This document shows, piece by piece, positions 42,351-63,098 of a DNA stretch of 64,000 nucleotides. The notes beneath the pieces are model-generated. The model saw only the letters and a list, made by a program, of their open reading frames with translations, was not told the origin of the DNA and made no database searches. The stretch lies in IMG/VR virus record IMGVR_UViG_3300005613_000002, positions 257,625 to 321,624 of that record, one strand, 5' to 3'. Each line of letters begins with the position of its first letter. Position 1 is the first letter of the stretch. Both the position numbers and the translations under genes were made by a program.

Positions 42351-43151
42351 TTAATTATGCACAAATAGTATCTTTTTTATCTTCACAATTTTTTCATCAG
42401 GGAAATTTTTTATGAACTTCTTAACATATTTTGAATCAGCACTATATGATTTAGTTAAATCAATTTGTTGTGATAAATCCCTTCTTGTTGCAAATGCTCC
42501 CATATCTATATAACCATCATTAATGCGAGTATTAAAATGTTTATAGTTATATCCATTATGAATCATATCCCAATATATTAGACCAACTTTTTCATTACTA
42601 ATTATTTGATTTAACTCACTAATAAATGTTGGGACATAATAATTATCATCACCTGTTAAAATTATATAATCACTACTACTTGCTTGTTTTCCAATATTTC
42701 TTGGTGTATGACCCCAATCATTATATCTTTTTCCTAAAAACATATAATGAATATTTTTCGAATCAAATTTAGAAACAATATCTTTAACTCTATTATTTTC
42801 CACATCATCTACAACAATTGTTGCTTTCCAATTATCATCAATTTGTGCTACTAATGATGATAATATTACATATAATTGTTTTACCCTATTATAGGTTGGA
42901 ATAATAAATTCAATAGTCGATGGTTTGGTTGTGACAGTATTAGAATCAAACACTAAACCTCTTTCCTTAACAACAATATGTTTCGTAACATTATCTTCAA
43001 TATAATCAACAATTAAAACCTTGCGAATATTTTTATTAGTATCACCAAATGTATCGTTGTTTGCATGAATTTTTTTATTAGAATTAACTAAAGTTTGTAA
43101 TTTTTTACTCACATCAACACCACCATATTTTGCTTTAATAATTTTAATCAT
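42351..43151 (-). CDS. GT2 glycosyltransferase with N-terminal SUEL/Gal-lectin-like domain
   Basis: N-term IKAKYG...ANNDTFGD...KVLIVDY; then IIPTYNR, VVDD, RNIG, TGDDNYY. Confidence 0.85.
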   Translation of the reverse strand: MIKIIKAKYGGVDVSKKLQTLVNSNKKIHANNDTFGDTNKNIRKVLIVDYIEDNVTKHIVVKERGLVFDSNTVTTKPSTIEFIIPTYNRVKQLYVILSSLVAQIDDNWKATIVVDDVENNRVKDIVSKFDSKNIHYMFLGKRYNDWGHTPRNIGKQASSSDYIILTGDDNYYVPTFISELNQIISNEKVGLIYWDMIHNGYNYKHFNTRINDGYIDMGAFATRRDLSQQIDLTKSYSADSKYVKKFIKNFPDEKIVKIKKILFVHN

Positions 43152-43160
43152 TCTTAAATA

Positions 43161-44033
43161 TTATTTAAACAAATACATATAATCAGCATGATTTCCCCAA
43201 TATGAATGATTTTTATAAGTATTGGTTTGTTTATATATTGAATTATGTGATGTAAAATGGACACCATGATTAATATGAATTGCTTCATTTTTACAATTCC
43301 ATTGATTTCTTTTTAATGTTTGAGTTTCAATCATACCACTATTTGTTCTTAATGCATTAGGCAATATACGTTCACAATGTTTAATCGCATCATTAAACCT
43401 CATAGTCATTTGATGAAACGGTTCATCATTTTGTCCTCTACGTTGCCATCCATTAGTGTTTATACCACCATAATTCATGTTAGTTAATACTTGACCATCT
43501 TCAAACTCTGGATAATCAAAATAACCTTCTGGATACATTACATCATGTTCTAAAAAAGAAACATATTCATAATTATTCATTTCTTCTGCATTATATAAAC
43601 ATTGCATAATCTGAAGCAACTGATTTAAATGAGATTGTGATGTATACCAACTCTTAATTTCATGGAAAGGATTATTAGGAATATGATTCCAAACACATGA
43701 TATAATATCTACTTTTTGTTCACTGGCTTTTTTTATTGTATCTAATGATTTATCAATTGCTGTATAAATTTTTGGTTTATTATTATTCGAATAAAATATA
43801 CCCAAACGGTTAGTGTTTAATTTTGGAATAGTTAATAAACTACCTTCTCTAACTTTTTCATTAAATTCAACACCATTAATTTCACCACTTATTTCAAGAA
43901 ATTTAACTTGATTAACTTTAGGGTCGCCAATAATTCTATTATCTGCACGTATTACTAATCTATTATTTATTATTCTTGACCGTATGGCAGATAAACAATC
44001 CTTATTACCGTATGTTGCTTTTGTTATTTTCAT
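43161..44033 (-). CDS. GT-A glycosyltransferase with N-terminal SUEL/Gal-lectin-like domain
   Basis: N-term ITKATYG...ADNRIIGDP...KFLEI; YVSFLEHDVMYP (DxD-like), HINHG. Confidence 0.7.
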   Translation of the reverse strand: MKITKATYGNKDCLSAIRSRIINNRLVIRADNRIIGDPKVNQVKFLEISGEINGVEFNEKVREGSLLTIPKLNTNRLGIFYSNNNKPKIYTAIDKSLDTIKKASEQKVDIISCVWNHIPNNPFHEIKSWYTSQSHLNQLLQIMQCLYNAEEMNNYEYVSFLEHDVMYPEGYFDYPEFEDGQVLTNMNYGGINTNGWQRRGQNDEPFHQMTMRFNDAIKHCERILPNALRTNSGMIETQTLKRNQWNCKNEAIHINHGVHFTSHNSIYKQTNTYKNHSYWGNHADYMYLFK

Positions 44034-44042
44034 ATTTTAAAA

Positions 44043-45014
44043 TTATAAAAGTACTGATTTTTTCCCAACTTTTTGAACATATTGATAATAATGCCAACTT
44101 GCTGTATTGGGTTTAATTTTCAAATTTTCATTATATGGCAATTTGTTCATATATGCAGATTTATAAAATAAACCACTTTTTGCATTAACAACACCAGCAT
44201 TATGGAATATGTTATATTTATACCATAAATTTTCACCTGATGAACCCCAACTAAATTGTAAATCATCATGACATACAGTTTCTTTACCCATTTTCCAAGC
44301 ATTCCACAAAACTGCCCACATATCTGAACACCAAATTTGTATAGTGTGATATGGTGGTTTTTTTTCTTCAGGATGTGCTTTCCTATATTCTTCGTCAGCA
44401 GCTACTTTTATTTTATTTAATTGTGTTATTTCTTTAAATAATTTTTCACTATCTTTTTCAACAGTATCCCAGAATTTCCAATCAATATCTTTTAAAATAT
44501 ATTGAGCACCAATAGCATTTAGTTCATTATCTTTAACTACTTGTTTATCAATATCAATAATTTCACACATTTTATCTAAAACATCAACACCTTTACCTAA
44601 AATATAGTCATGCGCAATATACCAACGAGTATCAGAACCATACCATTTATCATCATTTAAAAACTGTTCCCAATTAATTTTATTTTTAAATATTATATCA
44701 TTATCATGATAAAAAATTGCATCATTTTTTAATTCGGGTCTAGCTAACCAGTGTTGTTTTAATATATTTGGTCTGATAGATGAAGTATAATGTTTAGTTT
44801 CTCTAGTATCATTATAGAAAAACCAACGAACATATTTATAATGATTAGCGAGTTTTCGCCATTCTGGTGGAGTAACACCATCTTTAATTTGACATACAAT
44901 ATCAATATTATTTGGAAATATTCCCATTTCCAAAAAATTATTAATCATTACTTCAACCTGCCATGTATAATATGGTGTAGCAGGTTGAGCACAAACAAAT
45001 CTTAAATTTCTCAT
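44043..45014 (-). CDS. peptidyl O-glycosyltransferase-like protein (plant HPAT GT95 / SGT1 GT96-like)
   Basis: Collinear motifs YYTWQVEVM, Y...RP...Q, IFYHDNDIIF, IG, WCSDMWA, IFHNAG, FYKSAY. Confidence 0.68.
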   Translation of the reverse strand: MRNLRFVCAQPATPYYTWQVEVMINNFLEMGIFPNNIDIVCQIKDGVTPPEWRKLANHYKYVRWFFYNDTRETKHYTSSIRPNILKQHWLARPELKNDAIFYHDNDIIFKNKINWEQFLNDDKWYGSDTRWYIAHDYILGKGVDVLDKMCEIIDIDKQVVKDNELNAIGAQYILKDIDWKFWDTVEKDSEKLFKEITQLNKIKVAADEEYRKAHPEEKKPPYHTIQIWCSDMWAVLWNAWKMGKETVCHDDLQFSWGSSGENLWYKYNIFHNAGVVNAKSGLFYKSAYMNKLPYNENLKIKPNTASWHYYQYVQKVGKKSVLL

Positions 45015-45064: not shown

Positions 45065-46771
45065 TTAATTCACAAAAACAGTACCTGTTGAATGTACTTC
45101 ACCATCTATTTCTAATACCCATAAACGTGTAGTTGATATTATTACACCATTAACTTTTCCATCCCAAGGATTTTCAACATAATCATTTGTTCTTTGATAT
45201 AATAAACTACCATCTCTAGTAAATATTGACATTCTATGAACTGGATAACAATCTAAATTCCAAACCTCAAAATAATCATGAATTCCATCATTTAATGTTG
45301 GTGAAAAACCTTCAGGTACAAATATAACACAATCGGATGGTTCAGGAGGTCCTTCAGTAGTTGTTGGTGTAACACAATAACTCACATTAAATGTAATTGT
45401 TGCTGTATTACTCCAATTTGGATTATTATCTGTTCTAACTTGAAATTCAACAGTATCCACATATGAACCCGTCATTAATCCAGATGTTCTATAAAAAATA
45501 CGACTATCAAATTCAAATGGATATGGTATTATTTCATTTTCAACAATTGGCACTATCGCACCTTTGCTAAATTCACCATATTGTGGTAAAGTAGTTATTT
45601 TTATTGCATTAATTGAGTCACCATCATAATCGCTATATGGAAACCAACTAAGGTCTGGATATGATGATACTGATGATGAACATACCGTAATCCATCTAGT
45701 AATAGTAACTGTGTTATCATATGCAACTGGTGGTTGATTAACCCCACAATCAATAATATCATTGCAACAGGTAGTACAAATATCATCAATCCATTCTACA
45801 TCAAAAAATTCAAAACCTGAAGTCCCATATTTGTATGATGGTTCAATCGTACTACAAATTTTTATTCTAATACCATCAACATATCCACCATCATCTTCAA
45901 ATTCTACCCAACTTAATGAATTAGAACCACCACCAACTAAATAATACGTAATATATAATTCATCAAACGCTTCGTCTTCTAAATCATCATATGGAATATC
46001 TAATGTGTAACAATTAGCTAAATATATTGGTGGTTCAGTTGTTGTTGGTTCTATTGTTGTAGTTGTTGTAGGTTCTAATGTAGTTGGCTCAACAGTTGTT
46101 GTTGGCTCTGCTGTAGTTGTTGGTTCAACCGTTGTAGTTGATGAACAAATAACCTCAATCATTTTAGCAACAATATTTGTTGGATTATTAACATCTCTTA
46201 CAACTGCCCAATAAATACCATCTGATATAGCTAAATATGAATATGGATTAAGACCAACATCAAATGATGTTGTGTTTAATGCTTGAGATTCTGTTAAGCT
46301 TAAATAACTTCCAACTTCATAAACACCAGAACCACCATAATAATTTTCTAATATTACCTCAGATAAAAATGGTGTACATTCAAATCTTATATCATAGTCT
46401 ATTGGTGTTTGTGGTTCTACTGTCGTTGTTGGCTCAATTGTAGTTGTAGTTGGTGGTGTTACATTTGGGTCACACTCAATTGGGTCATATTCAATATTAT
46501 CATTAACTTGACTTTCATCAATTGAAATTTCTTCTATTTCATTAACATATAATATAAAAATACTCACTAAATTATTATATGTTGTAGCTGACATATATGA
46601 TAATTCATTATCATTAGGAATTGTATACTGAACACCATGATACGTAAAATATCCGTTAGCAATATCAGTTGCTGTTGGATATGTTTTAGGATATCCATCA
46701 TCAATAATTCCATCAGTTCTTTTTGTTACTGAAACATATAATGACCTTTTATATCCTGAATATTCTGACAT
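45065..46771 (-). CDS. virion fibre-like protein: shared N-terminal anchor, Thr-rich linkers, Ig/cadherin-like domain, T9SS type-B CTD
   Basis: MSEYSGYKRSL anchor; TTTVEP repeats; NQPPVAYD...ATITFNV; VPEGFSP..NDGIHDYF...IFTRDG...WDG. Confidence 0.7.
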   Translation of the reverse strand: MSEYSGYKRSLYVSVTKRTDGIIDDGYPKTYPTATDIANGYFTYHGVQYTIPNDNELSYMSATTYNNLVSIFILYVNEIEEISIDESQVNDNIEYDPIECDPNVTPPTTTTIEPTTTVEPQTPIDYDIRFECTPFLSEVILENYYGGSGVYEVGSYLSLTESQALNTTSFDVGLNPYSYLAISDGIYWAVVRDVNNPTNIVAKMIEVICSSTTTVEPTTTAEPTTTVEPTTLEPTTTTTIEPTTTEPPIYLANCYTLDIPYDDLEDEAFDELYITYYLVGGGSNSLSWVEFEDDGGYVDGIRIKICSTIEPSYKYGTSGFEFFDVEWIDDICTTCCNDIIDCGVNQPPVAYDNTVTITRWITVCSSSVSSYPDLSWFPYSDYDGDSINAIKITTLPQYGEFSKGAIVPIVENEIIPYPFEFDSRIFYRTSGLMTGSYVDTVEFQVRTDNNPNWSNTATITFNVSYCVTPTTTEGPPEPSDCVIFVPEGFSPTLNDGIHDYFEVWNLDCYPVHRMSIFTRDGSLLYQRTNDYVENPWDGKVNGVIISTTRLWVLEIDGEVHSTGTVFVN

Positions 46772-46817: not shown

Positions 46818-48863
46818 TTATCCACAATTTACATATGATTCATTATTATCATAAGCACAATAACCCTCAGTTGTTAGGTTCTTCCACGCAGTATTATCAG
46901 TTACTTTTGTAATTGAATCACTATTAGCATACTGAGTTTCTGCTAAATTTTCAGACATCCAAACTTGTGTACCAATTTTAACTGTTGGATATACCCTACC
47001 ATTATTTCCAGTCATTGTACCAGTATCTGTTGAATCGTCTTTAATTAACCTTAATGACAGACCATACGCATATAACCATAATGATATATTTGATGTTCCA
47101 CTAAAATTTACTAATTGTAATGCTCTCGTGAACATTCCAAATTCAGTAGTTGATGAACCAAATATTCCAAACTCATTAAATTTTGTGAAATTTCCATTTA
47201 CTGTTTCTCTATGACCACCACCAAATGCTGTGAATCCATATTCATCAGTAGCACCAGCATTAGGTGTTAACCAATGAGTTAAACCAACTTCTTTAAGTTT
47301 ACCACCAGCAACGGTACTACCACTAGCATATGTTTCTAATGTTTGAAATTCTGCTTGTGTAGGTACATGCCATCCAGAAGGTGCGATATTTCTTACATCA
47401 TTAATTGCATATTGATTATATAAATAACCATAACATTTTACACTACTTGGCTCAACAGTTGTAGTTGGTTCTAATGTTGTAGTTGGTTCTAATGTTGTAG
47501 TTGGTTCTAATGTTGTAGTTGGTTCTAATGTCGTGGTAGGCTCAACCGTAGTAGTTGGCTCTAATGTAGTTGTTGTAATTCCAGTTTCACCACAACCAAC
47601 ATTATTATAATCATTATTAAACGCACACATAGCACCAGTCGTTAAACCTGACCAAGTTTCATCATTTTCAATAATTGATATTAAATCATTATTAGCATAC
47701 TGAGTTTCCGCTAAATTTTCAGATAAATATTCTTGTGTCCCAATACAAATTGTACCATAAACTTTCCCATCATTACCAGTATATGTGCTAGTTTCACCAC
47801 TACTTAATGTTGTTGAATCTTTAATTAATCTTATACCTAAACCATGATTTCTATCTACTCCAGCATACACATTTGATTGAGTATTAGATGCATAAGAAGT
47901 AATTGTCCAATTTTGTAATGGATATCCACTTCTAACAGTTGATGTCCATAATGACCCATTTTCAAGTAAATTCACAAAATCACCAGTTGAACCATCACGT
48001 CTACCACTACCAACTAATGTCATTCCATATTCATCAGTAGCACCAGCATTAGGTGTTAACCAATGGTCTAAACCAACTTCTTTAAGTTTACCACCAGCAA
48101 CACTACCACCACCAGCAAGTGCAACTAACACTAAATATTCAGCTTGTGTAGGTACATGCCATCCAGTATTAGCTAAATCTCTACTATCATTAATGGTATG
48201 ACCATTATACAAATAACCATATTCAACACAACCAACAAATGGTTCAACTGTTGTTGTAGGTTCTAATGTAGTTGGCTCAACCGTTGTAGTTGGTTCTAAT
48301 GTAGTTGGTTCAACCGTTGTAGTTGGCTCAACCGTTGTAGTTGGTTCAACCGTTGTAGTTGGTTCTAATGTAGTACTAGGTTCAACCGTAGTGGTTGGCT
48401 CTAATGTAGTACTAGGTTCAACCGTTGTAGTTGGCTCTAATGTAGTACTAGGTTCTACTGTTGTAGTTGGCTCTAATGTAGTAGTTACTGTGCCTGATTT
48501 TTCAATAACACAATTAAATAAATCCCATTCAGATTCAACACTAAATGTTGGTACAACACCCGAACAATTTTCAGGGTCATATTCAACATTATCATTACTG
48601 AATTCAGTACCAAATGATATATCTTCATAACTATTCACATAAGAAATAAAAACATCAACAAGATTATTATATTCGGTTTCTGACATATTTGCAAGTGTAT
48701 CATCATCAGGTATTGAATATTGGATACCATTAACAATAAAGTATCCATTATACACATCAGTTGGTAGTGGGTATATTTTAGGATACCCAACAGCAATATC
48801 ATCTCCAATCATTTTAGTGATTGAAACTTTTAGCGACCTTTTATATTCTGTGTATTGACTCAT
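46818..48863 (-). CDS. virion fibre-like protein with two circularly permuted FISUMP (Fib_succ_major) domains and Thr-rich linkers
   Basis: YGYLYN...GWHVPT...GGKLKE...RLIKD followed by GNDGKVY.T..IGTQ...ENL. Confidence 0.75.
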   Translation of the reverse strand: MSQYTEYKRSLKVSITKMIGDDIAVGYPKIYPLPTDVYNGYFIVNGIQYSIPDDDTLANMSETEYNNLVDVFISYVNSYEDISFGTEFSNDNVEYDPENCSGVVPTFSVESEWDLFNCVIEKSGTVTTTLEPTTTVEPSTTLEPTTTVEPSTTLEPTTTVEPSTTLEPTTTVEPTTTVEPTTTVEPTTLEPTTTVEPTTLEPTTTVEPFVGCVEYGYLYNGHTINDSRDLANTGWHVPTQAEYLVLVALAGGGSVAGGKLKEVGLDHWLTPNAGATDEYGMTLVGSGRRDGSTGDFVNLLENGSLWTSTVRSGYPLQNWTITSYASNTQSNVYAGVDRNHGLGIRLIKDSTTLSSGETSTYTGNDGKVYGTICIGTQEYLSENLAETQYANNDLISIIENDETWSGLTTGAMCAFNNDYNNVGCGETGITTTTLEPTTTVEPTTTLEPTTTLEPTTTLEPTTTLEPTTTVEPSSVKCYGYLYNQYAINDVRNIAPSGWHVPTQAEFQTLETYASGSTVAGGKLKEVGLTHWLTPNAGATDEYGFTAFGGGHRETVNGNFTKFNEFGIFGSSTTEFGMFTRALQLVNFSGTSNISLWLYAYGLSLRLIKDDSTDTGTMTGNNGRVYPTVKIGTQVWMSENLAETQYANSDSITKVTDNTAWKNLTTEGYCAYDNNESYVNCG
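47450..47578 (-). repeat. 18-bp coding tandem repeat (TTTLEP units)
   Basis: GTAGTTGGTTCTAATGTT repeated in tandem from 47461. Confidence 0.9.
48241..48487 (-). repeat. 15/18-bp coding tandem repeat (TTT[VL]EP/STTLEP)
   Basis: In-frame repeat tract within the 46818-48863 ORF. Confidence 0.9.
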
Positions 48864-48884: not shown

Positions 48885-51155
48885 TTATGCATTATTTTCA
48901 ACATCATCATAAGCACATAAAGCACTTGTTGTTAATGCATCCCAAGTACTATCACCTATTGGTGTATAAACACCACCATCATAACCATCTATCCATGAGT
49001 TATTTCTCCATTGAGTTTCTTTTAAATTATCAGCAAGCCATTCTTGTGTTCCAATACAAATAGTTCTATATAATTTACCATCATTTCCTTGATAAGTACC
49101 TGATTCACCATGTGATAATGTCGTAGAATCTTTAACTAATCTTATACAATTACCTATTTTTTTAAATTGTGTTATAAATGATGAAACACCTAACCATACT
49201 CTAAAAACTATGGTATTATGGTATAATTCGCCAAAAAATGCTTGTGTTGTATCATATGGGTTTTCTGTTGTTGTCCATAAATTTGAAAATTCATACTTCC
49301 CATTATATGCACCACCACTAAATCTTTGTCCACTACCCCTTGCATTAAAACCATAAGTGTTTGTAGCACCAATATTTGGGTTTTCCCAATGTGTTAACCC
49401 TGTTTCTTTTAAATGTCCACTTGCATCATTAACATCTCTAGTACCATCAGGGTCAATATATAACAATAATGTACCTAATTCATCATTAGTTGGGACATGC
49501 CATCCAGTATTTGCTATATTTCTAGCATCATCAACTGTTAACCAATTATATAGAAAACCTAAATTAACTGTTTCAATTGGTTGGACTGTTGTTGTACCAG
49601 TAATTGGCTCTAATGTAGTTGTTGTACCAGTAATTGGCTCAATCGTTGTGGTAGTTGGCTCTAATGTAGTTGTTGGCTCAATCGTTGTGGTAGTGACACC
49701 ACTATCAATAATACAAACATAATCTAACCAACTACCAAAATATGTTGTTTCACCAGTAAAACATGGCTCAACTGTGGCTTTAACACAGGTGAATGGTTCA
49801 TCACATGTGTTTAATGCATAATCAATTGGACAAACATATCCATGATATCCATTAGTTGCTGAATATTCATAATGTAATGCTGTACCAACTAAATCAATAG
49901 AATCAAATATTTTCTTATCGCCTAAATCTTCATCACTAGTTGCATTTATTAAATCATATGGAGTTGCATCATATATATGAATACCAACACCAGCAACATT
50001 AGTTTCATTATGACCAATAACTTCAATAAAATTTTCACCTGCTGGTAATTCAATTGGATAAATAAACCAATATCTAAAAGGTATTCTTCCAGTATCTCCA
50101 CCACCAGTTGGGTCACCATTTGCTGCAAACATAGTTGCTAGTGCTGAAATATCTTGTTCAAGAATTAAACTACCATTTAGTTTGACTTTACCTAAATTAT
50201 CACAACCAAAACCTACATAATATGTTTTAGGTACTGCAATATTAAAACAAAAAGAAAAACCAATATCTTGATTATCACGAGTCACATTACCCCAAACACA
50301 TGAACGATTTAAAGGTCCTTCTAATGAAGGATATGGTGTATTTATCCAATATTGATTACTTGTTGGTATCCTCTCATAATCACCAGTACCATCATAATTC
50401 CAATCATCGAAAATTACTGCGCCATAGAGACCATAAGAAGAATGTTCTGCTTTTCTAACTACAGTATATGTTGAAGAATAATATGTTGGGTCAATTGTCT
50501 CATAAAGCACACAATCATCACCAATTGGTGTATAACCTTCTTCACATGTTTCACACCATGATAAATTTTCAAATCTACTACAATCAGGAATACCTAAATC
50601 AGTAAATACAATTTGATATTCATCACCTATTGGTACATCAGTAAAATAATTAGTTATAGGTGTTGTGTGTTCAAGATTAGTCCCAATAACACCACCAGAA
50701 CTACCAATTAATTCAACCATAATTGAACCAGTTCCACTTGTTAGCGTGTATGAAACAGTAACAGTACTCCCACTAAATTCATGCGGTAATATCGTATAAT
50801 TAATATTACATACTGGTGCTAATGTTGTGCTTGTAGTTGTTGGTGTTTCACCACTACAATTTATTGGGTCATATTCTACATTTACATTAATTTCATCATC
50901 AATAAATGACACATTTTCAATATCTTCAACATATGATTCAAATGCTGACACTAATTCATTATAATCAGTATCTGACATATATGATAATTCATTATCATCA
51001 GGAATTGGATATTCTTCATAATTATATATGAAATACCCACGAGCAATATCAGTTGCAGTTGGGTATGTTTTAGGATATCCAACTATAACCTCACCACCTA
51101 TAGCTTTCGTAACCGAAACATATAACGACCTTTTATATCCTGAATATTCTGACAT
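48885..51155 (-). CDS. virion fibre-like protein: shared anchor, Cys-flanked beta-sandwich (PA14-like) domain, permuted FISUMP domain
   Basis: MSEYSGYKRSL anchor; VGFGCDNLGKVKLNG; LGFLYN...RLVKD...GNDGKLYRTICIGTQEW. Confidence 0.72.
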   Translation of the reverse strand: MSEYSGYKRSLYVSVTKAIGGEVIVGYPKTYPTATDIARGYFIYNYEEYPIPDDNELSYMSDTDYNELVSAFESYVEDIENVSFIDDEINVNVEYDPINCSGETPTTTSTTLAPVCNINYTILPHEFSGSTVTVSYTLTSGTGSIMVELIGSSGGVIGTNLEHTTPITNYFTDVPIGDEYQIVFTDLGIPDCSRFENLSWCETCEEGYTPIGDDCVLYETIDPTYYSSTYTVVRKAEHSSYGLYGAVIFDDWNYDGTGDYERIPTSNQYWINTPYPSLEGPLNRSCVWGNVTRDNQDIGFSFCFNIAVPKTYYVGFGCDNLGKVKLNGSLILEQDISALATMFAANGDPTGGGDTGRIPFRYWFIYPIELPAGENFIEVIGHNETNVAGVGIHIYDATPYDLINATSDEDLGDKKIFDSIDLVGTALHYEYSATNGYHGYVCPIDYALNTCDEPFTCVKATVEPCFTGETTYFGSWLDYVCIIDSGVTTTTIEPTTTLEPTTTTIEPITGTTTTLEPITGTTTVQPIETVNLGFLYNWLTVDDARNIANTGWHVPTNDELGTLLLYIDPDGTRDVNDASGHLKETGLTHWENPNIGATNTYGFNARGSGQRFSGGAYNGKYEFSNLWTTTENPYDTTQAFFGELYHNTIVFRVWLGVSSFITQFKKIGNCIRLVKDSTTLSHGESGTYQGNDGKLYRTICIGTQEWLADNLKETQWRNNSWIDGYDGGVYTPIGDSTWDALTTSALCAYDDVENNA

Positions 51156-51189: not shown

Positions 51190-54100
51190 TTATATTTCTA
51201 ATGTTGTTGTAGGTTCTAATGTTGTCGTAGGCTCAACAGTGGTTGTTGGCTCTACTGTTGTTGTTACCGCATCAACAATTATACAATTATATAAATCCCA
51301 TTCAATTTGCGCTTCTGTTGGAAGTGTTGTTGTAGGTTCTACTGTTGTAGTAGTTCCAGTAATTGGTTCTAATGTCGTTGTTGTCGTAGGTTCAACTGTT
51401 GTAGTTGGAACAGGACAATCCATTTTAAAATACCAACCAACACCAGTTAAATATAATTCAACCATTGCTATAGTTGTTGATGTTGATTTATAAAATTCAT
51501 TAATACCAGAACTATCTGTAATTACCACAGGATAACCATCTGGTTCTAATTCTGGGTCACCAATATTCGGATAAATGAATGTTGATGTTGGGTCTAATTT
51601 ACCTGTTAATGCATTAGTAAATATATTTCTTGCTGATTCACCATAACCATACGCTGCATCACCAACAAAACCACTATCAATTTCGGTATTATTATCATAT
51701 TTCACAATAAATCTATCAGGATAACCACTCACATCATAATTAAAGACAATATTTCCAGTATCTGAACCTAAATCAATTTCATAAATATTTTTATATCCAA
51801 CTTCACCACCATCATATTCTACTAAATCACCACATAATGCATCATATATTGGTTGAACTGTAGTTGTTGGTTCAACCGTTGTGGTAGGTTCTAATGTAGT
51901 ACTAGTAATAGCACTAACAACAATACAACTATAATCAATCCATTCATAAGTCACAGTATCACCAATTGTGGTTGTAGTTGGCTCTAATGTTGTTGGCTCA
52001 ATTGTAGTTGTAGGTTCAACTGTTGTAGTTGGCTCACAAGGAATTAAATCTGCTTTAACACAGGTAAATGGTTCGTCACATGTATTTAACGAATATCCAC
52101 TTGGACAAACATATCCATGATATCCAAAATCATCAGAATTCTCATAATGTATAGGTGTTGTTGGGTTAGTAACTAATTGGTCTGATGTAAATAATATTTT
52201 TTCACCCAAATCTTCATCACTAGTTGCATTTTCTAAATCATAAGGTGTTGCATCATATATCTGAATACCAACTGCTGCAACACTATATTCGTTATGACCA
52301 TAAATTTCGATCACATTCTTACCAGCAGGTAGATGCATTGGATAAATAAACCAATATCTATAAGGTATTCTATCAGGGAAACCACCACCAGTTGGGTCAC
52401 CATTTGCCGTAAACATAGCAGTTAATGATGGAATATCTTGCTCAAGAACCATCTCACCATTAAGTTTTATTTTTCCCCAATTATCACAACCAAAACCTAC
52501 ATAATATGTTTTGGCAACAGCAATATCAATACAATATGAAAAACCAATATCTTGTTTATTTCGTGTTACATTACCCCAAATAGATGTACGATTTAAAGGT
52601 CCTTGGTCACTATATGGGTTTACCCAATATGGATTACTTAAATCAAATCTACTATAATTTCCAGTACCATCATAATTCCAACTATCAAATAATACAGCAC
52701 CATAAACACCATATGATGTATCATCAGTTTTTTTAACAACATAATATGATGAAGCATAATATGTTGGGTCAATTACATCATAAAGAACACATTCATCATC
52801 ACCAACTGGGTCATATCCTTCTTCACATGTTTTACACCATGATATAATCTCAAGAGCATTACAACTTGGGTCATTTAATTCTGTGAAAGACATCAAATAA
52901 TCATCATTAAATGGTACATTAAGAAATGAATAAACACCAGTACTATATGCTATGTTAGAATAATAACTAGTACCAGTTTCACCAGATAGTTGAACAACCA
53001 TTGGGAATGTACCACTAGTTATTTCATAAAATATATTAACACTATTTCCACTAAACTCATATGGTAATATTGAATAATTTATATTACATACTGGTTCAAT
53101 AGTCGTTGTTGTATCAACAACAATACAACTATAATCAATCCATTCATAGGTTACACTATCACCAACCGTTGTAGTAGGTGCTACCGTAGTTGTAGGTTCA
53201 ACTGTTGTAGTTGGCTCAATTGTAGTTGTTGGCTCTAATGTAGTACTAGTAATAGCACTAACAACAATACAACTATAATCAATCCATTCATAGGTTACAC
53301 TATCACCAACTGTAGTCGTTGGCTCAACTGTTGTAGTTGGCTCTAATGTAGTACTAGGTTCAACCGTTGTAGTTGGTTCTACTGTAGTCGTTGGCTCAAC
53401 TGTTGTAGTTGGCTCTAATGTAGTACTAGGTTCAACCGTTGTAGTTGGTTCAATCGTAGTACTAGGTTCAACCGTTGTAGTTGGTTCTACTGTAGTCGTT
53501 GGCTCTAATGTCGTTGGTTCAATCGTAGTACTAGGTTCAACCGTTGTCGTTGGTTCTACCGTAGTACTAGGTTCAACCGTTGTAGTAGTAGGTTCTACCG
53601 TAGTACTAGGTTCAACCGTTGTAGTAGTAGGTTCTACCGTAGTACTAGGTTCTAATGTCGTAGTAGTAGGTTCTACCGTAGTAGTAGGTTCTAATGTCGT
53701 AGTAGTAGGTTCTACCGTAGTAGTAGGTTCTAATGTCGTTGTTGTACTAGTAGTTGTTGGCTCTAGTGTAGTTGTTGTACTAGTAGTTGTTGGCTCTAGT
53801 GTAGTTGTTGTGGTTGTATCTCCCGGACATGGAGGACAGCATGGACATGGAATTAAACTACCAAACATAGTCATTTCATAATCAGGAATAGTCCAAGACC
53901 TATTTGACTTATATGACATAGCAAACAATAATTCTTGGTCTTCGATAATAAACATTTTTAGTGTATTAAACACTTTTCCAACAATGTTACCATCTAAATC
54001 AGCTAAATCATAATATCTAACATCTAATGATTTTACTGTGCCTGTTAATATTTTACTACTTCCTGTTGGTATTAAAGTAATACCTAATGTTCTAGTGCTT

Positions 54101-55128
54101 GATTTATGCCACATAATTGTTGGCATTTCAAGTTTAGGTGTTTTTAAATAAAATTCCTCACCATAAACATTTTTATCCGAATCATTACTATAATGAATTA
54201 CACCTAATTTTTTATAAACAGGTGCTTGATTTTGAATATATGAAACAAAACCACCATATGTTCTAGTTTCAAAATTACCATATTTTATATCAGTAGCTTG
54301 AACACCTGCAACTTCTTCTGTATATATCACAGATAAATCCCAAAATGGAAATATTGTATTATTGGTATTATAATTAGCAAAATAACTAATAATACTATCA
54401 GCACTATAATCACCAGTAAAACTATAATTTGATGATACACCGCTATAATATATTAGTGCACCAGCAATTGCAGTTGGTGTGTATAATGAAAAATCTGGCA
54501 ATTCTCTATCAACATTAACAACAATATTATCATTCAATAAATTACCAGTTTTACTAATAATTTTATATGTTAAATATGGTGTAGGTAAATCCCTATTAAT
54601 TGTATGTCCAGTAGTATTAGTATCATGAGCATATTTAATAAACAACAAATCCCCAACTAAAGGTTCTTCAGTATTTGAACCATATGTTGGTGCTTTTCTT
54701 AAAGATATTGAATTCCCACCTGTAACACCACTCATATACACCATTAAATCAGGCTGTCTAGTGTGTAATTCATCAGTAATAAATGTTGTTCCACTATCAC
54801 TAAAAAAACCTAAAGAATGTGCATCATTAACTATATCATATGGTTCAGATATTGGTTTAATTTCATTATATTCATCACCTTCATATGTTTTTGGAATAAA
54901 TGAAATTATTTTAGGGTTTTTATCTCTAGGTCTTAAAATACTAATGTCTGAAGAATTGAAATCTGGTTCAACACTAGTATTAATTTCATTAATAAAGTTA
55001 TAATCAATCTCACTATCGCCAACAGCAAAGTATTTAAACGTTAAATCACCCTTAGATAGTTGTTCTCTACCTTTGGATGTCAACATTATATTTAATACTA
55101 CAGGGTCTGTCTTTTCAATGAGTGCCAT
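51190..55128 (-). CDS. large baseplate/fibre-associated protein with long mucin-like Thr-rich region
   Basis: N-term LNIMLTSKGREQLSKG...YFAVGDSEIDY (collar-like); about 170 aa TT[VLI]EP tract; PA14-like and PDRFIV modules; AGTATTTAT at 55143-55151. Confidence 0.7.
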   Translation of the reverse strand: MALIEKTDPVVLNIMLTSKGREQLSKGDLTFKYFAVGDSEIDYNFINEINTSVEPDFNSSDISILRPRDKNPKIISFIPKTYEGDEYNEIKPISEPYDIVNDAHSLGFFSDSGTTFITDELHTRQPDLMVYMSGVTGGNSISLRKAPTYGSNTEEPLVGDLLFIKYAHDTNTTGHTINRDLPTPYLTYKIISKTGNLLNDNIVVNVDRELPDFSLYTPTAIAGALIYYSGVSSNYSFTGDYSADSIISYFANYNTNNTIFPFWDLSVIYTEEVAGVQATDIKYGNFETRTYGGFVSYIQNQAPVYKKLGVIHYSNDSDKNVYGEEFYLKTPKLEMPTIMWHKSSTRTLGITLIPTGSSKILTGTVKSLDVRYYDLADLDGNIVGKVFNTLKMFIIEDQELLFAMSYKSNRSWTIPDYEMTMFGSLIPCPCCPPCPGDTTTTTTLEPTTTSTTTTLEPTTTSTTTTLEPTTTVEPTTTTLEPTTTVEPTTTTLEPSTTVEPTTTTVEPSTTVEPTTTTVEPSTTVEPTTTVEPSTTIEPTTLEPTTTVEPTTTVEPSTTIEPTTTVEPSTTLEPTTTVEPTTTVEPTTTVEPSTTLEPTTTVEPTTTVGDSVTYEWIDYSCIVVSAITSTTLEPTTTIEPTTTVEPTTTVAPTTTVGDSVTYEWIDYSCIVVDTTTTIEPVCNINYSILPYEFSGNSVNIFYEITSGTFPMVVQLSGETGTSYYSNIAYSTGVYSFLNVPFNDDYLMSFTELNDPSCNALEIISWCKTCEEGYDPVGDDECVLYDVIDPTYYASSYYVVKKTDDTSYGVYGAVLFDSWNYDGTGNYSRFDLSNPYWVNPYSDQGPLNRTSIWGNVTRNKQDIGFSYCIDIAVAKTYYVGFGCDNWGKIKLNGEMVLEQDIPSLTAMFTANGDPTGGGFPDRIPYRYWFIYPMHLPAGKNVIEIYGHNEYSVAAVGIQIYDATPYDLENATSDEDLGEKILFTSDQLVTNPTTPIHYENSDDFGYHGYVCPSGYSLNTCDEPFTCVKADLIPCEPTTTVEPTTTIEPTTLEPTTTTIGDTVTYEWIDYSCIVVSAITSTTLEPTTTVEPTTTVQPIYDALCGDLVEYDGGEVGYKNIYEIDLGSDTGNIVFNYDVSGYPDRFIVKYDNNTEIDSGFVGDAAYGYGESARNIFTNALTGKLDPTSTFIYPNIGDPELEPDGYPVVITDSSGINEFYKSTSTTIAMVELYLTGVGWYFKMDCPVPTTTVEPTTTTTLEPITGTTTTVEPTTTLPTEAQIEWDLYNCIIVDAVTTTVEPTTTVEPTTTLEPTTTLEI
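53310..53817 (-). repeat. longest coding Thr-rich tandem tract
   Basis: Continuous (T/S)TT[VLI]EP units, 15-21 bp period. Confidence 0.92.
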
Positions 55129-61109: not shown

Positions 61110-63098
61110 TTATATTGTTGGTATATGTATAAATAATGTGTTAACTGTTGGACTTGGTGCTAATGTTGTCGTTGTTGTAGTCCCTGTTGGTGCTAATGTT
61201 GTCGTTGTTGTGGTCACAATTGGTGTGTCAGGGCAAGACATAATATAATTCCATGCTGTACCATTCATTGGTGCATAAACTTCAATTCTGGCAGTTTGTG
61301 TTATTGTATTTTTATTAAAACTATCATTACCTGATGGACTTCCATCAATCCAAGGATAACCATCTGGAGCATAATTTAAATTACCAACATCTGGATATGT
61401 CACACCTAATATTGGGTCAACTTTACCAGTTAATGAATCCGTAAATCTTACTCTATTTAACCCACCATAATTAAAATAAGAATCACCTCTATAACCAGTA
61501 TCAATTACTGTATTATTATCAAAGAAGACAATAAACCTATCTGGAATTCCAATAGCATTGTATTCTAATATTACATTACCACCATATTGACCCAAGAATA
61601 CGTTTTGTGTTGTAGGATAACTAATTCCACCACTAAATGAAGTTGAATCATCACACTGAATTAACCCAGATGTTGTTGGTGGTACTGGTTCTAATGTTGT
61701 GGTAGTTGTTGTTGGTTCTAATGTCGTTGTTGGACAAGGTGGGCAAGGAGGACATTCTTTTAAACCACCAAAACCTCCAACACCATAATCAGGAAGCGTC
61801 CAAGACCTATTTGATTTATATGATATGGCATTTAATATTTCTTGGTCTTCTATAACAAAGACCTTTAAACCAATAAACACTTTTCCAATAATATTTAAAT
61901 TATCATCAGCTAAATCATAATATTCAATATCTAATGATTTTGTTTCACCAGTTAATATTTTAACATCACCAGTAGCCTTAAACATCGCACCTAATGTCCT
62001 TGTGCTTGATTTATGCCACATAATTGTTGGTAAGTTTAGTGTTGGTGTGTCTGAATGAAATTCTTCACCATAGACATTAGCTGGTGAACTATTTGTATAA
62101 TGGATTAAACCTAATTTTTTATAAACAGGTGCTTGATTTTGAATATATGAGACAAAACCACCAACTGTTCTACTTTTAAATTGCCCAAAAACTTTATCTC
62201 CTGCTTGAATACCTGCAACTTCTTCAGTAAAAATTACATGCATGTTCCAATAAGGGAACACATCAATTGGATATTGATAATTAGCTATAAATTGTAATAC
62301 TTCATCACTTAAATAATCAGTTGAATATTCATGTTGATATGTTAATCCACTATAATATACTAGTGCACCAGCAATTGCAGTTGGTGAATATAAAGTAAAG
62401 TCTGGTAATTCTCTATCTACTTGAACCAATAAATCATCATTATTAGTATCACCACTCACACCAGCAATACGGTACATTAAATGTGCTGTTGGTAGTGTTT
62501 TATTTATTATATGTCCAGTAGTATCAGTATCTTGAGTATACTTAATAAACAATAAATCATTAATTGCTGGCTCATATCCGCTTGTTCCAAAAGTCGGTGC
62601 TTTTCTTAGTGATATTAAATCACCACCTGTGACTCCACTCATATATACCATTAAATCAGGTTGTTTAACATGTAAACCATCAGTAAGATATGTTGTTATT
62701 GTTTCATCGAAAAACCCTAAAGAAACAGCAGATGTTGTCGCAGTATATCCAGTTCCAAGTAAAATTGCTGTAGTTGCACTTGTACCAGTAGTTGCTGTTG
62801 TTCCAGTAATAATCTCAATATAACCATCAGTATTTCCTGTAGTACCAGTATCACCAGTAATTGGAATTATCGATAAAATCTTAGGATTCTTGTCTTTTGG
62901 CTTTAAAATACTTGAATCAACAGAATTATAATCTGGGTCAATTTCATCATTAATCTCATTAATAAATTCATAATCGATTTCACTATCACCAAGTGCTAAA
63001 TATTTAAACGTTAATTCACCCTTAGATATTTGCTCCCTACCTTTAGATGTTAACATTATATTTAATAAAACCGTTTCTTTCCTATCAATGAATGCCAT
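61110..63098 (-). CDS. shorter paralog of the 51190-55128 baseplate/fibre-associated protein
   Basis: Same N-terminal ~450 aa, CPPCP hinge, Thr-rich linker, PDRFIV module; AGTATTTAT at 63114-63122. Confidence 0.7.
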   Translation of the reverse strand: MAFIDRKETVLLNIMLTSKGREQISKGELTFKYLALGDSEIDYEFINEINDEIDPDYNSVDSSILKPKDKNPKILSIIPITGDTGTTGNTDGYIEIITGTTATTGTSATTAILLGTGYTATTSAVSLGFFDETITTYLTDGLHVKQPDLMVYMSGVTGGDLISLRKAPTFGTSGYEPAINDLLFIKYTQDTDTTGHIINKTLPTAHLMYRIAGVSGDTNNDDLLVQVDRELPDFTLYSPTAIAGALVYYSGLTYQHEYSTDYLSDEVLQFIANYQYPIDVFPYWNMHVIFTEEVAGIQAGDKVFGQFKSRTVGGFVSYIQNQAPVYKKLGLIHYTNSSPANVYGEEFHSDTPTLNLPTIMWHKSSTRTLGAMFKATGDVKILTGETKSLDIEYYDLADDNLNIIGKVFIGLKVFVIEDQEILNAISYKSNRSWTLPDYGVGGFGGLKECPPCPPCPTTTLEPTTTTTTLEPVPPTTSGLIQCDDSTSFSGGISYPTTQNVFLGQYGGNVILEYNAIGIPDRFIVFFDNNTVIDTGYRGDSYFNYGGLNRVRFTDSLTGKVDPILGVTYPDVGNLNYAPDGYPWIDGSPSGNDSFNKNTITQTARIEVYAPMNGTAWNYIMSCPDTPIVTTTTTTLAPTGTTTTTTLAPSPTVNTLFIHIPTI

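What the first reader, a model, noticed from the sequence alone, without database searches (positions are those of the whole stretch)
44043..45014. Plant-type peptidyl O-glycosyltransferase homolog (HPAT GT95 / SGT1 GT96-like) in a phage
Its motifs are collinear along the full length with the plant hydroxyproline O-arabinosyltransferase pattern as I recall it (phage versus plant): YYTWQVEVM vs YNTWQCRVM, YTSSIRPNILKQ vs YVVLNRPWAFVQ, IFYHDNDIIF vs ILMSEPDHII, IWCSDMWA vs GWVLEMYA, IFHNAG vs IIHYTYG, FYKSAY vs FDKRSY. These enzymes glycosylate Pro-rich cell-wall extensins. A soluble phage version next to Pro/Thr repeats suggests a prokaryotic or viral branch of the family acting on Thr. This alignment was made from memory, not computed.
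Basis: partly seen in the sequence, partly recalled or inferred. Interest (0 to 1): 0.82.

Follow-up and report, generated by a model that had tools for sequence, protein, structure and literature searches.

The report
Phage sugar-adding enzyme for threonine tails
This gene encodes a soluble glycosyltransferase of a large, uncharacterised phage family that sits almost always right behind genes for capsid, tail or fibre proteins carrying threonine-rich tracts, so it most likely coats the virus particle with sugars, which would extend virion glycosylation to phages of many bacterial groups.

Summary
The ORF is real: 44043-45014, minus strand, 323 aa. It is conserved in over 2500 metagenome proteins and about 1000 clusters at 50% identity, and it models confidently as a GT-A glycosyltransferase (pLDDT 96.8) with an invariant YxDxD motif, a His and a Lys.

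The link to plant HPAT is only partly supported. Pfam's HPAT model (PF23452) hits none of 135 family members. However, HPAT-domain proteins are the closest named family by predicted structure (TM 0.71-0.74, against 0.60 for GT8) and by language-model features.

The strongest result is genomic context. The gene directly upstream has a poly-Thr or Ser/Thr run in 100 of 144 loci, against 1 of 144 directly downstream. In Bacillota prophages the capsid and tail-tube proteins end in poly-Thr tails. Seven relatives that lack the enzyme also lack these tails.

In this window, five fibre-like proteins with TTTxEPTTT-type linkers (four adjoining the cluster) precede a cluster of three GT-A genes.

Best reading: an initiating, cytoplasmic Thr O-glycosyltransferase for virion proteins. 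No glycan has been shown.

The parts
44043..45014 (-). Target gene: 323-aa soluble GT-A glycosyltransferase (phrog_4417). Proposed initiating Thr O-glycosyltransferase for virion proteins. Invariant Y102-x-D104-x-D106, H271, K285.
43161..44033 (-). Partner gene: 290 aa, with a small N-terminal beta domain (aa 1-70) and a GT-A domain (aa 72-290) carrying an invariant E162-H163-D164. Proposed glycan-extending transferase.
   Evidence: It co-occurs with the target in 45 of 89 loci at 52-70% identity. AF2 model pLDDT 89.9. Foldseek hits are BoGT6a and SpsA. It is not BLAST-similar to the target.
42351..43151 (-). Third glycosyltransferase: 266 aa, the same N-terminal small domain plus a GT2 domain.
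   Evidence: Pfam PF00535 at 1.4e-11 and NCBIfam GT2-type hits. The N-terminal domain is shared with the partner (E 0.002). GT2 genes recur downstream of the target in other loci (cluster 8).
45065..46771 (-). 568-aa protein directly upstream, with a TTTVEPTTT linker (aa 212-245, window 46037-46138) and a CHU_C (T9SS-type) C-terminal domain. Candidate acceptor.
46818..48863 (-). 681-aa fibre-like protein with two Fib_succ_major domains, each preceded by a TTTxEPTTT linker (window 48249-48485 and 47457-47576). Candidate acceptor.
48885..51155 (-). 756-aa fibre-like protein with a Fib_succ_major domain and a Thr/Pro linker (window 49644-49694). Candidate acceptor.
51190..55128 (-). 1312-aa protein with five Thr/Pro linker tracts. 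The longest is 169 aa (window 53311-53817). Candidate acceptor.
   Evidence: no Pfam or PHROG hit
61110..63098 (-). 662-aa protein with a PTTTLEPTTTTTTLEP tract. It is the fifth and last Ser/Thr/Pro-rich ORF among the 78 ORFs of the window. Candidate acceptor.

Best explanation
The gene encodes a cytoplasmic, metal-dependent (DxD) GT-A glycosyltransferase. I propose that it starts O-glycosylation of threonine-rich tracts on the phage's own virion proteins.

Proposed steps, all inferred unless marked:
1. The enzyme binds a nucleotide sugar whose identity is unknown.
2. It transfers the first sugar to Thr hydroxyls in unstructured tracts. In this jumbo phage these are the TTTxEPTTT linkers of the fibre-like proteins encoded just upstream. 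In Bacillota phages they are the poly-Thr C-terminal tails of the capsid, tail-tube and small decoration proteins.
3. The two neighbouring GT-A enzymes then extend the glycan. In other phages the extending partners vary: GT2, GT6, GT7C, GT25, GT29, GT32, methyltransferases or a radical-SAM protein.
4. The result would be a mucin-like glycan coat on the particle.

Shown here: the fold, the conserved catalytic-type residues, the size of the family, and the position-specific coupling to Thr tracts. Inferred: the acceptor, the initiating role, the donor sugar and the biological benefit. The benefit could be protection of linkers from proteases, hydration, or shielding from recognition.

The fold is closest to the HPAT/SGT1-type peptide glycosyltransferases of plants and algae, but the family is a separate, sequence-distinct branch.
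For: 1. It is a real, conserved enzyme.
- 2503 homologs at E<=1e-3.
- 1005 clusters at 50% identity, 608 of them at E<=1e-30.
- AF2 pLDDT 96.8; Foldseek PDB hits are all GT-A transferases: WbbM, UGGT (GT24), XXYLT1, LARGE1 and glycogenin (GT8), AgtA, GT6.
- Invariant YxDxD, H271 and K285; no transmembrane segment.

2. Position-specific coupling to Thr tracts.
- A run of T5+ or [ST]7+ occurs in 100 of 144 genes at position -1, 1 of 144 at +1, and 58 of 1317 elsewhere.
- A 30-aa window with >=80% Ser/Thr/Pro occurs in 44 of 74 genes at -1 and 0 of 75 at +1 in viral contigs.
- The -1 proteins fall into 58 unrelated clusters, and 34 of these carry the runs.

3. The carriers are virion proteins.
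- The ~605-aa proteins directly upstream of the target in aquatic phage contigs (upstream cluster 1) have a Phage_tail_2 / major tail protein N-terminus.
- Named examples: phiCTP1 tail tube gp18, phage 1706 major structural protein orf13, the bIL285 and VPE25 major tail proteins, Bacchae gp069 and LP65 gp050/gp051.
- In a Metabacillus prophage the capsid, a 106-aa protein and the tail protein all end in TTTTTTTV/I.
- In Bacillota-type loci, 42 of 42 runs end within 12 aa of the C-terminus.

4. Presence/absence control.
- Seven relatives of the bIL285 tail protein (45-56% identity) come from phages without the enzyme. None has a poly-Thr at the capsid or tail-protein C-terminus.
- Three whole enzyme-negative genomes have no such run in any reading frame.

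5. Thr codons inside the runs are mixed (ACA, ACT, ACG, ACC). Selection is therefore on the protein, not on a DNA repeat.

6. In the small Bacillota phages examined, the annotated structural module shows no other gene named as a glycosyltransferase, which argues for an initiating role.

7. Fusions and neighbours.
- Fusion partners are mostly second glycosyltransferase domains.
- Relatives associate with peptide-modification proteins: PqqD, radical SAM/SPASM, LanC-like.

8. HPAT-domain proteins, which are peptide O-glycosyltransferases, are the nearest named family.
Against: - No glycan, glycopeptide or enzyme activity has been observed. All evidence is comparative.
- About a third of the loci show no Thr run in the adjacent gene. 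Examples are the L033-type and L013-type aquatic loci. In the L013 type the nearby fibre carries GSS/GTS collagen-like repeats instead.
- Chromosomal two-domain copies in Mucilaginibacter and Pedobacter have no Thr-rich neighbour. The family may therefore have other acceptors.
- The loci are phylogenetically related, so the raw counts overstate independence.
- ORFs were called with a simple longest-ORF rule, and the thresholds for a 'run' were my own choice.
- The upstream proteins in this window have no proven virion role (no PHROG or Pfam structural hit).
- Pfam's HPAT model does not hit the family.
Confidence: 0.7

Rival explanations
1. The enzyme does glycosylate virion glycoproteins, but it extends a sugar that another transferase has already placed on Thr. 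In this window that other enzyme could be the partner or the GT2. The target would then be an elongating enzyme, not the initiating one.
For: The window carries three GT-A genes in a row, and none has an assigned order of action. The structural neighbours in the PDB (GT8, GT24, XXYLT1, LARGE1) mostly act on sugar acceptors.
Against: The target is the one constant component, while the accompanying transferases vary or are absent. In the structural modules of phiCTP1, 1706 and bIL285 no other gene is annotated as a glycosyltransferase. The nearest named family transfers directly to amino-acid hydroxyls.
Confidence: 0.13
2. It modifies a host surface polymer such as teichoic acid, cell-wall polysaccharide or O-antigen. 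This would be a lysogenic-conversion or superinfection-exclusion function, like prophage TarP or the Gtr systems.
For: Many copies are in prophages of Bacillota. Prophage-encoded GT-A enzymes that alter wall polymers are known; TarP appears among the partner's Foldseek hits.
Against: The gene lies inside the late structural operon, between capsid or tail-tube genes and connector or chaperone genes. It has no membrane segment or flippase partner. It occurs in Herelleviridae phages, a group generally regarded as lytic, and in large and jumbo phage contigs. Its presence tracks poly-Thr tails on virion proteins.
Confidence: 0.07
3. It glycosylates phage DNA bases (hydroxymethyl-pyrimidine hypermodification) to evade restriction.
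For: Phage glycosyltransferases are best known for this role. The window holds a dCMP deaminase and a GmrSD_N-domain protein.
Against: Known DNA arabinosyl- and glucosyltransferases, including those of RB69 and DLP3, are GT-B-like and sit in nucleotide-metabolism modules. This gene sits in structural modules of small temperate phages; no hydroxymethylase was seen in the parts of those genomes read here. The coupling to Thr tracts has no explanation under this model.
Confidence: 0.04
4. The adjacency to Thr-rich genes reflects shared ancestry or hitch-hiking of a mobile cassette, with no enzyme-substrate relation. The true acceptor would be something else, for example a small peptide.
For: The loci are related, and some relatives sit next to peptide-modification genes (PqqD fusions, radical SAM/SPASM, LanC-like) rather than virion genes. 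About a third of the loci lack an adjacent Thr run.
Against: 34 unrelated upstream protein clusters carry the tract. The enzyme sits after the capsid gene in some phages and after the tail-tube gene in others, yet the poly-Thr proteins persist. Homologous tail proteins in enzyme-free phages lack the tail.
Confidence: 0.06

Closest known systems
Plant and algal hydroxyproline O-arabinosyltransferase (HPAT, CAZy GT95) and peptidyl-serine alpha-galactosyltransferase (SGT1, GT96); Pfam PF23452 HPAT domain
   Same: Both have a GT-A-type fold. HPAT-domain proteins are the nearest named family by predicted structure (TM 0.71-0.74 over about 280 residues) and by language-model features. Both act, or are proposed to act, on hydroxyls of residues in repetitive, proline- or hydroxy-amino-acid-rich structural proteins. 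The plant functions are from established knowledge, not tested here.
   Different: The Pfam HPAT profile gives no hit in any of 135 members tested. The phage enzyme is soluble and lacks a Golgi membrane anchor. The acceptor tracts are Thr-rich, and no prolyl hydroxylase was seen in the window. The donor sugar is unknown. The host is a phage, not a eukaryotic secretory pathway.
Virion glycosylation of actinobacteriophages (Freeman et al. 2023, Cell Host Microbe 31:1216, as cited in PMC12619734 and PMC13313380)
   Same: Phage-encoded glycosyltransferases, often with a methyltransferase, decorate the C-termini of capsid and tail-tube subunits. The family studied here is likewise coupled to C-terminal tails of capsid and tail-tube proteins.
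   Different: The hosts differ (Bacillota, Bacteroidota and others). The enzyme family was not compared with the mycobacteriophage enzymes, because the primary paper is not held. The acceptor signature here is an explicit poly-Thr tail or a TTTxEP linker. Here glycosylation is predicted, not demonstrated.
Retaining GT-A families GT8 and GT24 (glycogenin, XXYLT1, LARGE1, UGGT catalytic domain) and WbbM
   Same: These are the best solved-structure matches (Foldseek E 1e-7 to 1e-5, TM 0.41-0.53). They share the DxD-containing GT-A core.
   Different: Sequence identity is only 6-11%. There is no Pfam GT8 hit. TM scores are lower than to HPAT-domain models. These families mostly use sugar acceptors.
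Cytoplasmic O-glycosylation of serine-rich-repeat adhesins in Gram-positive bacteria (GtfA/GtfB plus extending GT-A enzymes) and mucin-type initiation by ppGalNAc-transferases
   Same: The logic is the same. An initiating transferase acts on long Ser/Thr repeats, and variable transferases then extend the glycan. In the SRRP case this also happens in the cytoplasm. This comparison rests on established knowledge.
   Different: The enzyme families are unrelated (GtfA/B is GT-B; ppGalNAc-T is GT27 with a lectin domain). This is a functional analogy only and was not tested here.
Chlorovirus PBCV-1 capsid glycosylation enzymes (for example the A64R GT-A domain, PDB 2p6w)
   Same: A virus encodes its own soluble GT-A enzymes to glycosylate its major capsid protein. 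2p6w appears among the Foldseek hits of the partner protein (rank 45).
   Different: PBCV-1 is a eukaryotic virus that makes N-linked atypical glycans. No specific similarity to the target was found.

Membership tests
GT95 HPAT / GT96 SGT1 (Pfam PF23452 HPAT domain) | Significant match to the family's sequence profile | tested here: not met
   No Pfam hit at E<=1 for the target. 0 of 12 and 0 of 31 diverse relatives hit at E<=1. 0 of 92 representatives hit at E<=0.01. The precomputed Pfam column is empty for all 244 listed homologs.
GT95 HPAT / GT96 SGT1 (Pfam PF23452 HPAT domain) | The overall fold is that of the HPAT domain, closer than to any other named family | tested here: met
   ESM Atlas structure search gives TM 0.71-0.74 (277-284 aligned residues) to chlorophyte proteins in which 99-100% of cluster members carry PF23452, and TM 0.72 to bacterial PqqD+HPAT proteins. 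Plant GT8 gives 0.60. A haptophyte HPAT cluster shares 179 of 256 features. Caveats: both sides are predicted models, no E-value is given, and the alignment cannot be inspected.
   No HPAT sequence or alignment could be obtained by reference. The hit lists show only the best 120-150 proteins, and all of these were family members. The phage halves of the motifs are confirmed.
GT95 HPAT / GT96 SGT1 (Pfam PF23452 HPAT domain) | Type II membrane anchor and secretory-pathway location | tested here: not met
   No hydrophobic segment: the maximum 19-residue Kyte-Doolittle mean is 0.87. The first strand of the fold starts at residue 4.
GT95 HPAT / GT96 SGT1 (Pfam PF23452 HPAT domain) | The acceptor is hydroxyproline, which requires a prolyl 4-hydroxylase (HPAT), or Ser next to Hyp (SGT1) | tested here: inconclusive
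   No 2OG-Fe(II) oxygenase family appears among the Pfam hits of 46 further window ORFs (25 of 29 families listed). However, only 64 kb of a 321-kb contig was available. The poly-Thr tails of the Bacillota phages are Pro-poor or Pro-free.
GT95 HPAT / GT96 SGT1 (Pfam PF23452 HPAT domain) | Donor is UDP-beta-L-arabinofuranose (HPAT) or UDP-galactose (SGT1) | not testable with these tools
   No sugar-nucleotide synthesis genes were seen in the window. The donor cannot be inferred from sequence.
GT-A fold nucleotide-sugar glycosyltransferases | Rossmann-like alpha/beta/alpha core with a DxD motif after a central strand and a C-terminal His | tested here: met
   AF2 pLDDT 96.8. Strand 99-103 is followed by D104-N-D106, and H271 follows strand 269-271. 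There are 167 PDB matches at E<=0.001, led by GT-A enzymes.
GT8 (Pfam PF01501) | Match to the GT8 sequence profile | tested here: not met
   No PF01501 hit. Structural similarity only, TM 0.4-0.53.
Phage virion-glycosylation systems (actinobacteriophage type) | Phage-encoded glycosyltransferase(s), with acceptor tails at the C-termini of capsid and tail-tube subunits | tested here: met
   In relatives: 42 of 42 Thr runs in Bacillota-type loci end within 12 aa of the C-terminus of the -1 protein. Capsid and tail proteins both carry them. In this window the tracts are internal linkers of fibre-like proteins.
Phage virion-glycosylation systems (actinobacteriophage type) | Glycans demonstrated on virion proteins | not testable with these tools
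   This needs mass spectrometry or glycan staining of virions. No report for these phages was found in the held library.
PHROG phrog_4417 (unknown function) | Full-length profile match | tested here: met
   E 1.5e-58, residues 5-316 matched to profile positions 2-291 of 293.

The most novel reading that the evidence does not exclude
A widespread phage-encoded, mucin-like O-glycosylation system. An HPAT/SGT1-like initiating enzyme would write sugars onto genetically encoded poly-Thr 'glyco-tags' on capsid, tail-tube, decoration and fibre proteins, in phages of Bacillota, Bacteroidota and other phyla. These include laboratory and dairy phages such as VPE25, bIL285, 1706 and the Lactobacillus Herelleviridae. 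The family would be the prokaryotic/viral sister, and possibly the source, of the plant extensin-glycosylating enzymes.
Probability: 0.45. Interest if true: 0.85.

Novelty: new variant of a known kind. Interest (0 to 1): 0.77.

Why it matters
- **Scope of virion glycosylation.** If the prediction holds, virion glycosylation is not a peculiarity of actinobacteriophages. It would be a common trait of phages of Gram-positive bacteria, Bacteroidota and aquatic hosts.
- **A readable signature.** A poly-Thr tail next to this enzyme would allow glycosylated virion proteins to be predicted from sequence alone.
- **Practical relevance.** This bears on phage therapy and on dairy and fermentation phages, through antibody recognition, stability and adsorption. 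It also bears on cryo-EM interpretation of disordered C-terminal tails, and on glyco-engineering, as a soluble bacterial-cytoplasm enzyme plus a short tag.
- **Annotation and evolution.** It would give a function to phrog_4417 and about 1000 protein clusters now annotated as hypothetical. It would also give the plant HPAT/SGT1 fold a large microbial relative.

Tried and rejected
- **DNA arabinosyltransferase idea.** The RB69 and DLP3 enzymes are GT-B-like and sit in nucleotide-metabolism clusters. Rejected as a model.
- **Direct sequence tests for HPAT membership.** Pfam scans of the target and of 12, 31 and 92 relatives gave no PF23452 hit.
- **NCBIfam and PDB sequence searches.** NCBIfam gave nothing for the target. 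PDB searches with the single sequence and with the profile gave nothing useful.
- **Attempts to reach HPAT-domain sequences for a profile-profile test.** I tried a profile search of 1.84 billion representatives and word-index searches from an Enterococcus prophage member and from the divergent LP65 Orf49. All listed hits were family members without Pfam labels, so the hhalign test could not be run.
- **Paralogy of target and partner.** BLAST shows no similarity. They had been linked only through a fusion protein during single-linkage clustering.
- **Literature.** Searches for phage HPAT, GT95 in bacteria, poly-threonine phage proteins and glycosylated capsid or tail proteins found no report on this family. 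The Freeman 2023 paper is not held.
- **Failed look-up.** Exact-sequence look-up of the L051 protein failed, probably because the database calls a different start codon.
Full report
**1. The observation**

The six phage motifs lie at aa 15-23, 76-87, 100-109, 227-234, 269-274 and 283-288.

In an alignment of 31 relatives reaching down to 24% identity, the invariant columns are W18, Y67, Y76, P82, Y102, D104, D106, Y132, Y137, G169, Q226, W228, M232, W233, H271, N272, G274, F283, K285, P293 and Y309.

The plant halves of the motif pairs were quoted from memory and could not be checked. No HPAT sequence was obtainable by reference.

**2. The source genome**

The window is part of IMGVR_UViG_3300005613_000002, a 321,624-bp viral contig. 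G+C content is about 27%. No cultured phage is similar at the DNA level.

Neighbouring proteins carry Fib_succ_major and CHU_C (type IX secretion) domains. The best cultured relative of the enzyme is in a Chryseobacterium phage. A Bacteroidota host is therefore likely; this is an inference.

**3. The protein is a conserved GT-A glycosyltransferase**

Standard family libraries do not name it:
- Pfam and NCBIfam give no hit at E<=1.
- PHROGs places it in phrog_4417, of unknown function (1.5e-58).

The family is large:
- 2503 homologs, all named 'hypothetical'.
- At least 560 viral contigs.
- 67 bacterial genome loci, mostly prophages of Bacilli plus Bacteroidota and assorted MAGs.
- 77 cultured phage records: Lactobacillus, Enterococcus, Staphylococcus, Lactococcus, Clostridium, Chryseobacterium.
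- A profile search of 1.84 billion representatives finds 1005 clusters at E<=1e-3 and 608 at E<=1e-30.

AlphaFold2 gives a very confident model (pLDDT 96.8, pTM 0.92). Foldseek against the PDB returns only GT-A enzymes, at TM 0.41-0.53: WbbM, the UGGT catalytic domain (GT24), XXYLT1, LARGE1 and glycogenin (GT8), Skp1 galactosyltransferase, and alpha-1,3-galactosyltransferase (GT6).

D104-x-D106 follows strand 99-103, and H271 follows strand 269-271. This is the usual GT-A metal and nucleotide-sugar site. There is no hydrophobic segment, so the enzyme is soluble and cytoplasmic.

**4. Is it HPAT-like?**

By sequence profile, no. PF23452 is not hit by the target, by 12 and 31 diverse relatives at E<=1, or by 92 representatives at E<=0.01. 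No listed homolog has a precomputed Pfam domain.

By predicted structure and language-model features, yes:
- TM 0.71 and 0.74 (284 and 277 aligned residues) to chlorophyte clusters in which 99-100% of members carry PF23452.
- TM 0.72 to a Pseudomonadota cluster of PqqD+HPAT proteins.
- TM 0.60 to plant GT8, for comparison.
- A few of the family's own Atlas clusters have PF23452 in 10% of members.
- A haptophyte HPAT/ShK cluster shares 179 of 256 features, above the 170 the tool gives as typical of same-family pairs.

No GT95 or GT96 structure is in the PDB search set; a profile of the family hit nothing. GT95 was only predicted to be GT-A-like in PMC8476585.

My reading: this is a distinct family whose nearest named relative is the HPAT domain. 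It is probably remotely homologous, but it is not a GT95/GT96 member by the sequence criterion. A profile-profile test could not be run.

**5. Genomic context: the main finding**

I called ORFs in 153 loci and looked at what lies next to the enzyme gene.

Thr-run statistics:

| Measure | Position -1 | Position +1 | Other positions |
|---|---|---|---|
| Run of five or more Thr, or seven or more Ser/Thr (all loci) | 100 of 144 | 1 of 144 | 23 of 260 at -2/-3; 58 of 1317 elsewhere |
| 30-aa window >=80% Ser/Thr/Pro (viral contigs) | 44 of 74 | 0 of 75 | 16 of 64 at -2 |

After low-complexity masking, the -1 proteins fall into 58 unrelated clusters, and 34 of these contain run-bearing members. Thr codons inside the runs are mixed (ACA 1402, ACT 1209, ACG 331, ACC 238). 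The tract is therefore selected at the protein level.

The carriers are virion proteins:
- The commonest aquatic -1 protein has a Phage_tail_2 / major-tail-protein N-terminus, followed by a long Ser/Thr/Pro extension.
- In phiCTP1 the enzyme follows the tail tube protein gp18, which ends ...ETTTTTNAPITTTTTT.
- In phage 1706 it follows the major structural protein orf13, which ends in ten Thr.
- In bIL285 it follows the major head protein. The major tail protein five genes downstream ends ...KTTTTTTTTTRHD.
- In VPE25 the tail protein ends ...TTTDTTTTTTTTTTAGK.
- In Lactobacillus phages Bacchae and LP65 the -1 gene is a small protein made of a short N-terminal domain plus Thr repeats. LP65 gp051, a structural protein identified by 2-D gel and MS according to its record, also ends Thr-rich.
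- In a Metabacillus prophage the capsid, a 106-aa protein and the 205-aa tail protein all end ...TTTTTTTV/I.
- In Bacillota-type loci, all 42 runs in -1 proteins end within 12 residues of the C-terminus.

**6. A presence/absence control**

The bIL285 tail protein has 203 homologous records in the phage collection, mostly Streptococcus phages. None of those genera appears among the 77 enzyme-positive records.

I read seven enzyme-negative relatives at 45-56% identity: Javan73, phiRg507T2_2, vB_EauS-123, GBSV1, PH10, Javan590 and Bacillus phage 11143.
- Their capsid and tail proteins end without any poly-Thr.
- Their module has no gene at the position where the enzyme gene sits.
- The three genomes read whole have no such run in any reading frame.

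The sample is small but clean.

**7. The module in this window**

Three GT-A genes lie in a row:
- The target.
- A 290-aa partner at 43161-44033. It has a small N-terminal beta domain and a GT-A domain with invariant E162-H163-D164. AF2 pLDDT is 89.9, and the Foldseek hits are BoGT6a and SpsA.
- A GT2 at 42351-43151, carrying the same N-terminal domain.

Of the 78 ORFs in the window, only five have Ser/Thr/Pro-rich tracts. All five lie in the block just upstream: 45065-46771, 46818-48863, 48885-51155, 51190-55128 and 61110-63098. The linkers are of the TTT(V/L/I)EPTTT type and reach 169 aa.

The partner accompanies the target in 45 of 89 loci. Elsewhere the companions vary:
- GT2 and GT32-type (Gly_transf_sug) transferases, and FkbM-like methyltransferases.
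- A radical SAM/SPASM protein, which is fused to the target in L023.
- Among the 150 best representatives, 86 are longer than 400 aa. Their extra domains include GT7C, GT2, GT6, GT25, GT29, GT32 and GT61.

One constant domain plus variable transferases, and no other annotated glycosyltransferase in the small Bacillota modules examined, argues that the target places the first sugar. This is an inference.

**8. Mechanism proposed, and its limits**

The proposal is a cytoplasmic, DxD-dependent transfer of a sugar from an unknown NDP-sugar to Thr hydroxyls. The acceptors would be disordered poly-Thr tails or Thr/Pro linkers of virion proteins. Companion enzymes would then extend the glycan, giving a mucin-like coat.

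Nothing here shows a glycan. Further limits:
- About a third of the loci lack an adjacent Thr run.
- In the L013 type the nearby fibre has GSS/GTS collagen-like repeats, and a GT1 and a methyltransferase are present.
- Chromosomal two-domain copies in Mucilaginibacter and Pedobacter sit next to a LanC-like protein and near an M60 enhancin-like peptidase, with no Thr-rich neighbour.
- The loci are related, so the counts are not independent events.
- My ORF calling and thresholds are simple.

**9. Rival explanations**

- DNA base glycosylation. Known phage DNA arabinosyl- and glucosyltransferases are GT-B-like and sit in nucleotide-metabolism modules.
- Host wall-polymer modification. The gene is in the late structural operon, has no membrane part, and occurs in Herelleviridae and jumbo-phage genomes.
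- Hitch-hiking without an enzyme-substrate relation. This is countered by the 34 independent carrier clusters and by the presence/absence control.
- An elongating rather than initiating role. This remains a live alternative for this window.

**10. Comparison with what is known, and novelty**

Virion glycosylation by phage enzymes is established for actinobacteriophages, at the C-termini of capsid and tail-tube subunits (Freeman et al. 2023, as cited in PMC12619734). Chloroviruses also glycosylate their own capsid. HPAT and SGT1 are established peptide O-glycosyltransferases of plants; this rests on my own knowledge.

I found no paper in the held library on this family, or on poly-Thr tails of phage proteins as glycosylation sites. 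The library is incomplete, so prior work cannot be excluded.

I file this as a new variant of a known kind: a new enzyme family and a new acceptor signature for virion glycosylation, with a fold link to the plant enzymes.

Noticed in passing
window 43161-44033 (aa 1-70) and 42351-43151 (aa 1-70): The partner GT-A and the GT2 share a small N-terminal beta domain (I.KA.YG ... N...GD ... K.L; BLAST E 0.002 over 46 aa). It has no Pfam hit. It might dock these extending enzymes to the substrate or to the target enzyme.
   Followed up: partly
L023:6001-8007 and L019:6918-8003: In several aquatic phages the gene next to the enzyme encodes a radical SAM/SPASM protein (342-361 aa). In L023 the two are fused into one 668-aa protein. 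Its role (sugar or peptide modification) is unknown.
   Followed up: partly
L105:7725-8705, L106:8481-10769; Atlas rows: Cellular relatives sit next to peptide-related genes: a LanC-like protein in Mucilaginibacter and an M60 enhancin-like (mucinase-type) peptidase in Pedobacter. The Atlas lists Pseudomonadota proteins that fuse a PqqD peptide-binding domain to an HPAT domain. This hints at a wider role in peptide glycosylation.
   Followed up: no
window 45065-46771, 46818-48863, 48885-51155: The three fibre-like proteins share a paralogous N-terminal region of about 100 aa (MSEYSGYKRSLYVSVTK...). They carry bacterial surface-protein modules: a CHU_C type IX secretion sorting domain and Fibrobacter succinogenes major paralogous domains. 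These are unusual in a phage and point to a Bacteroidota host.
   Followed up: partly
L108 genes -6, -5 and -1 relative to the enzyme gene: In a Metabacillus prophage three different virion proteins end with the same kind of tag: seven to nine Thr followed by one or two hydrophobic residues (TTTTTTTV, TTTTTTTTTVI). This suggests a defined C-terminal recognition signal.
   Followed up: partly
L164:1-1882: In a locus type without poly-Thr neighbours, the nearby fibre carries GSS/GTS collagen-like triplet repeats. A GT1-family gene and a methyltransferase-like gene lie on the opposite strand beside the enzyme.
   Followed up: no
P0052 (N-terminal 85 aa) and L013:7438-8517 (C-terminal about 70 aa): A Cys-rich segment (C..C...C.LCGC...AKVF.P....CP) appears at the N-terminus of some target-family members and at the C-terminus of some partner proteins. 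Pfam DUF6171 is hit weakly in a few members.
   Followed up: no
window 1-41313: The rest of the window holds an eclectic set of Pfam domains: tRNA-His guanylyltransferase (Thg1), a GmrSD_N domain protein, two R2K ATP-grasp proteins, dCMP deaminase, HSP20, thioredoxin, DNA and RNA ligases, PIF1-like helicase, two amidases, and GIY-YIG/T5orf172 nucleases. There is also a RuvC-like resolvase (40645-41313) and an exonuclease (38763-40256).
   Followed up: no
window 41564-42310: A 248-aa ORF just downstream of the three transferases has no family hit. However, it recurs after the transferase cluster in the related 246-kb contig (cluster 34 in L012). It may belong to the module.
   Followed up: no
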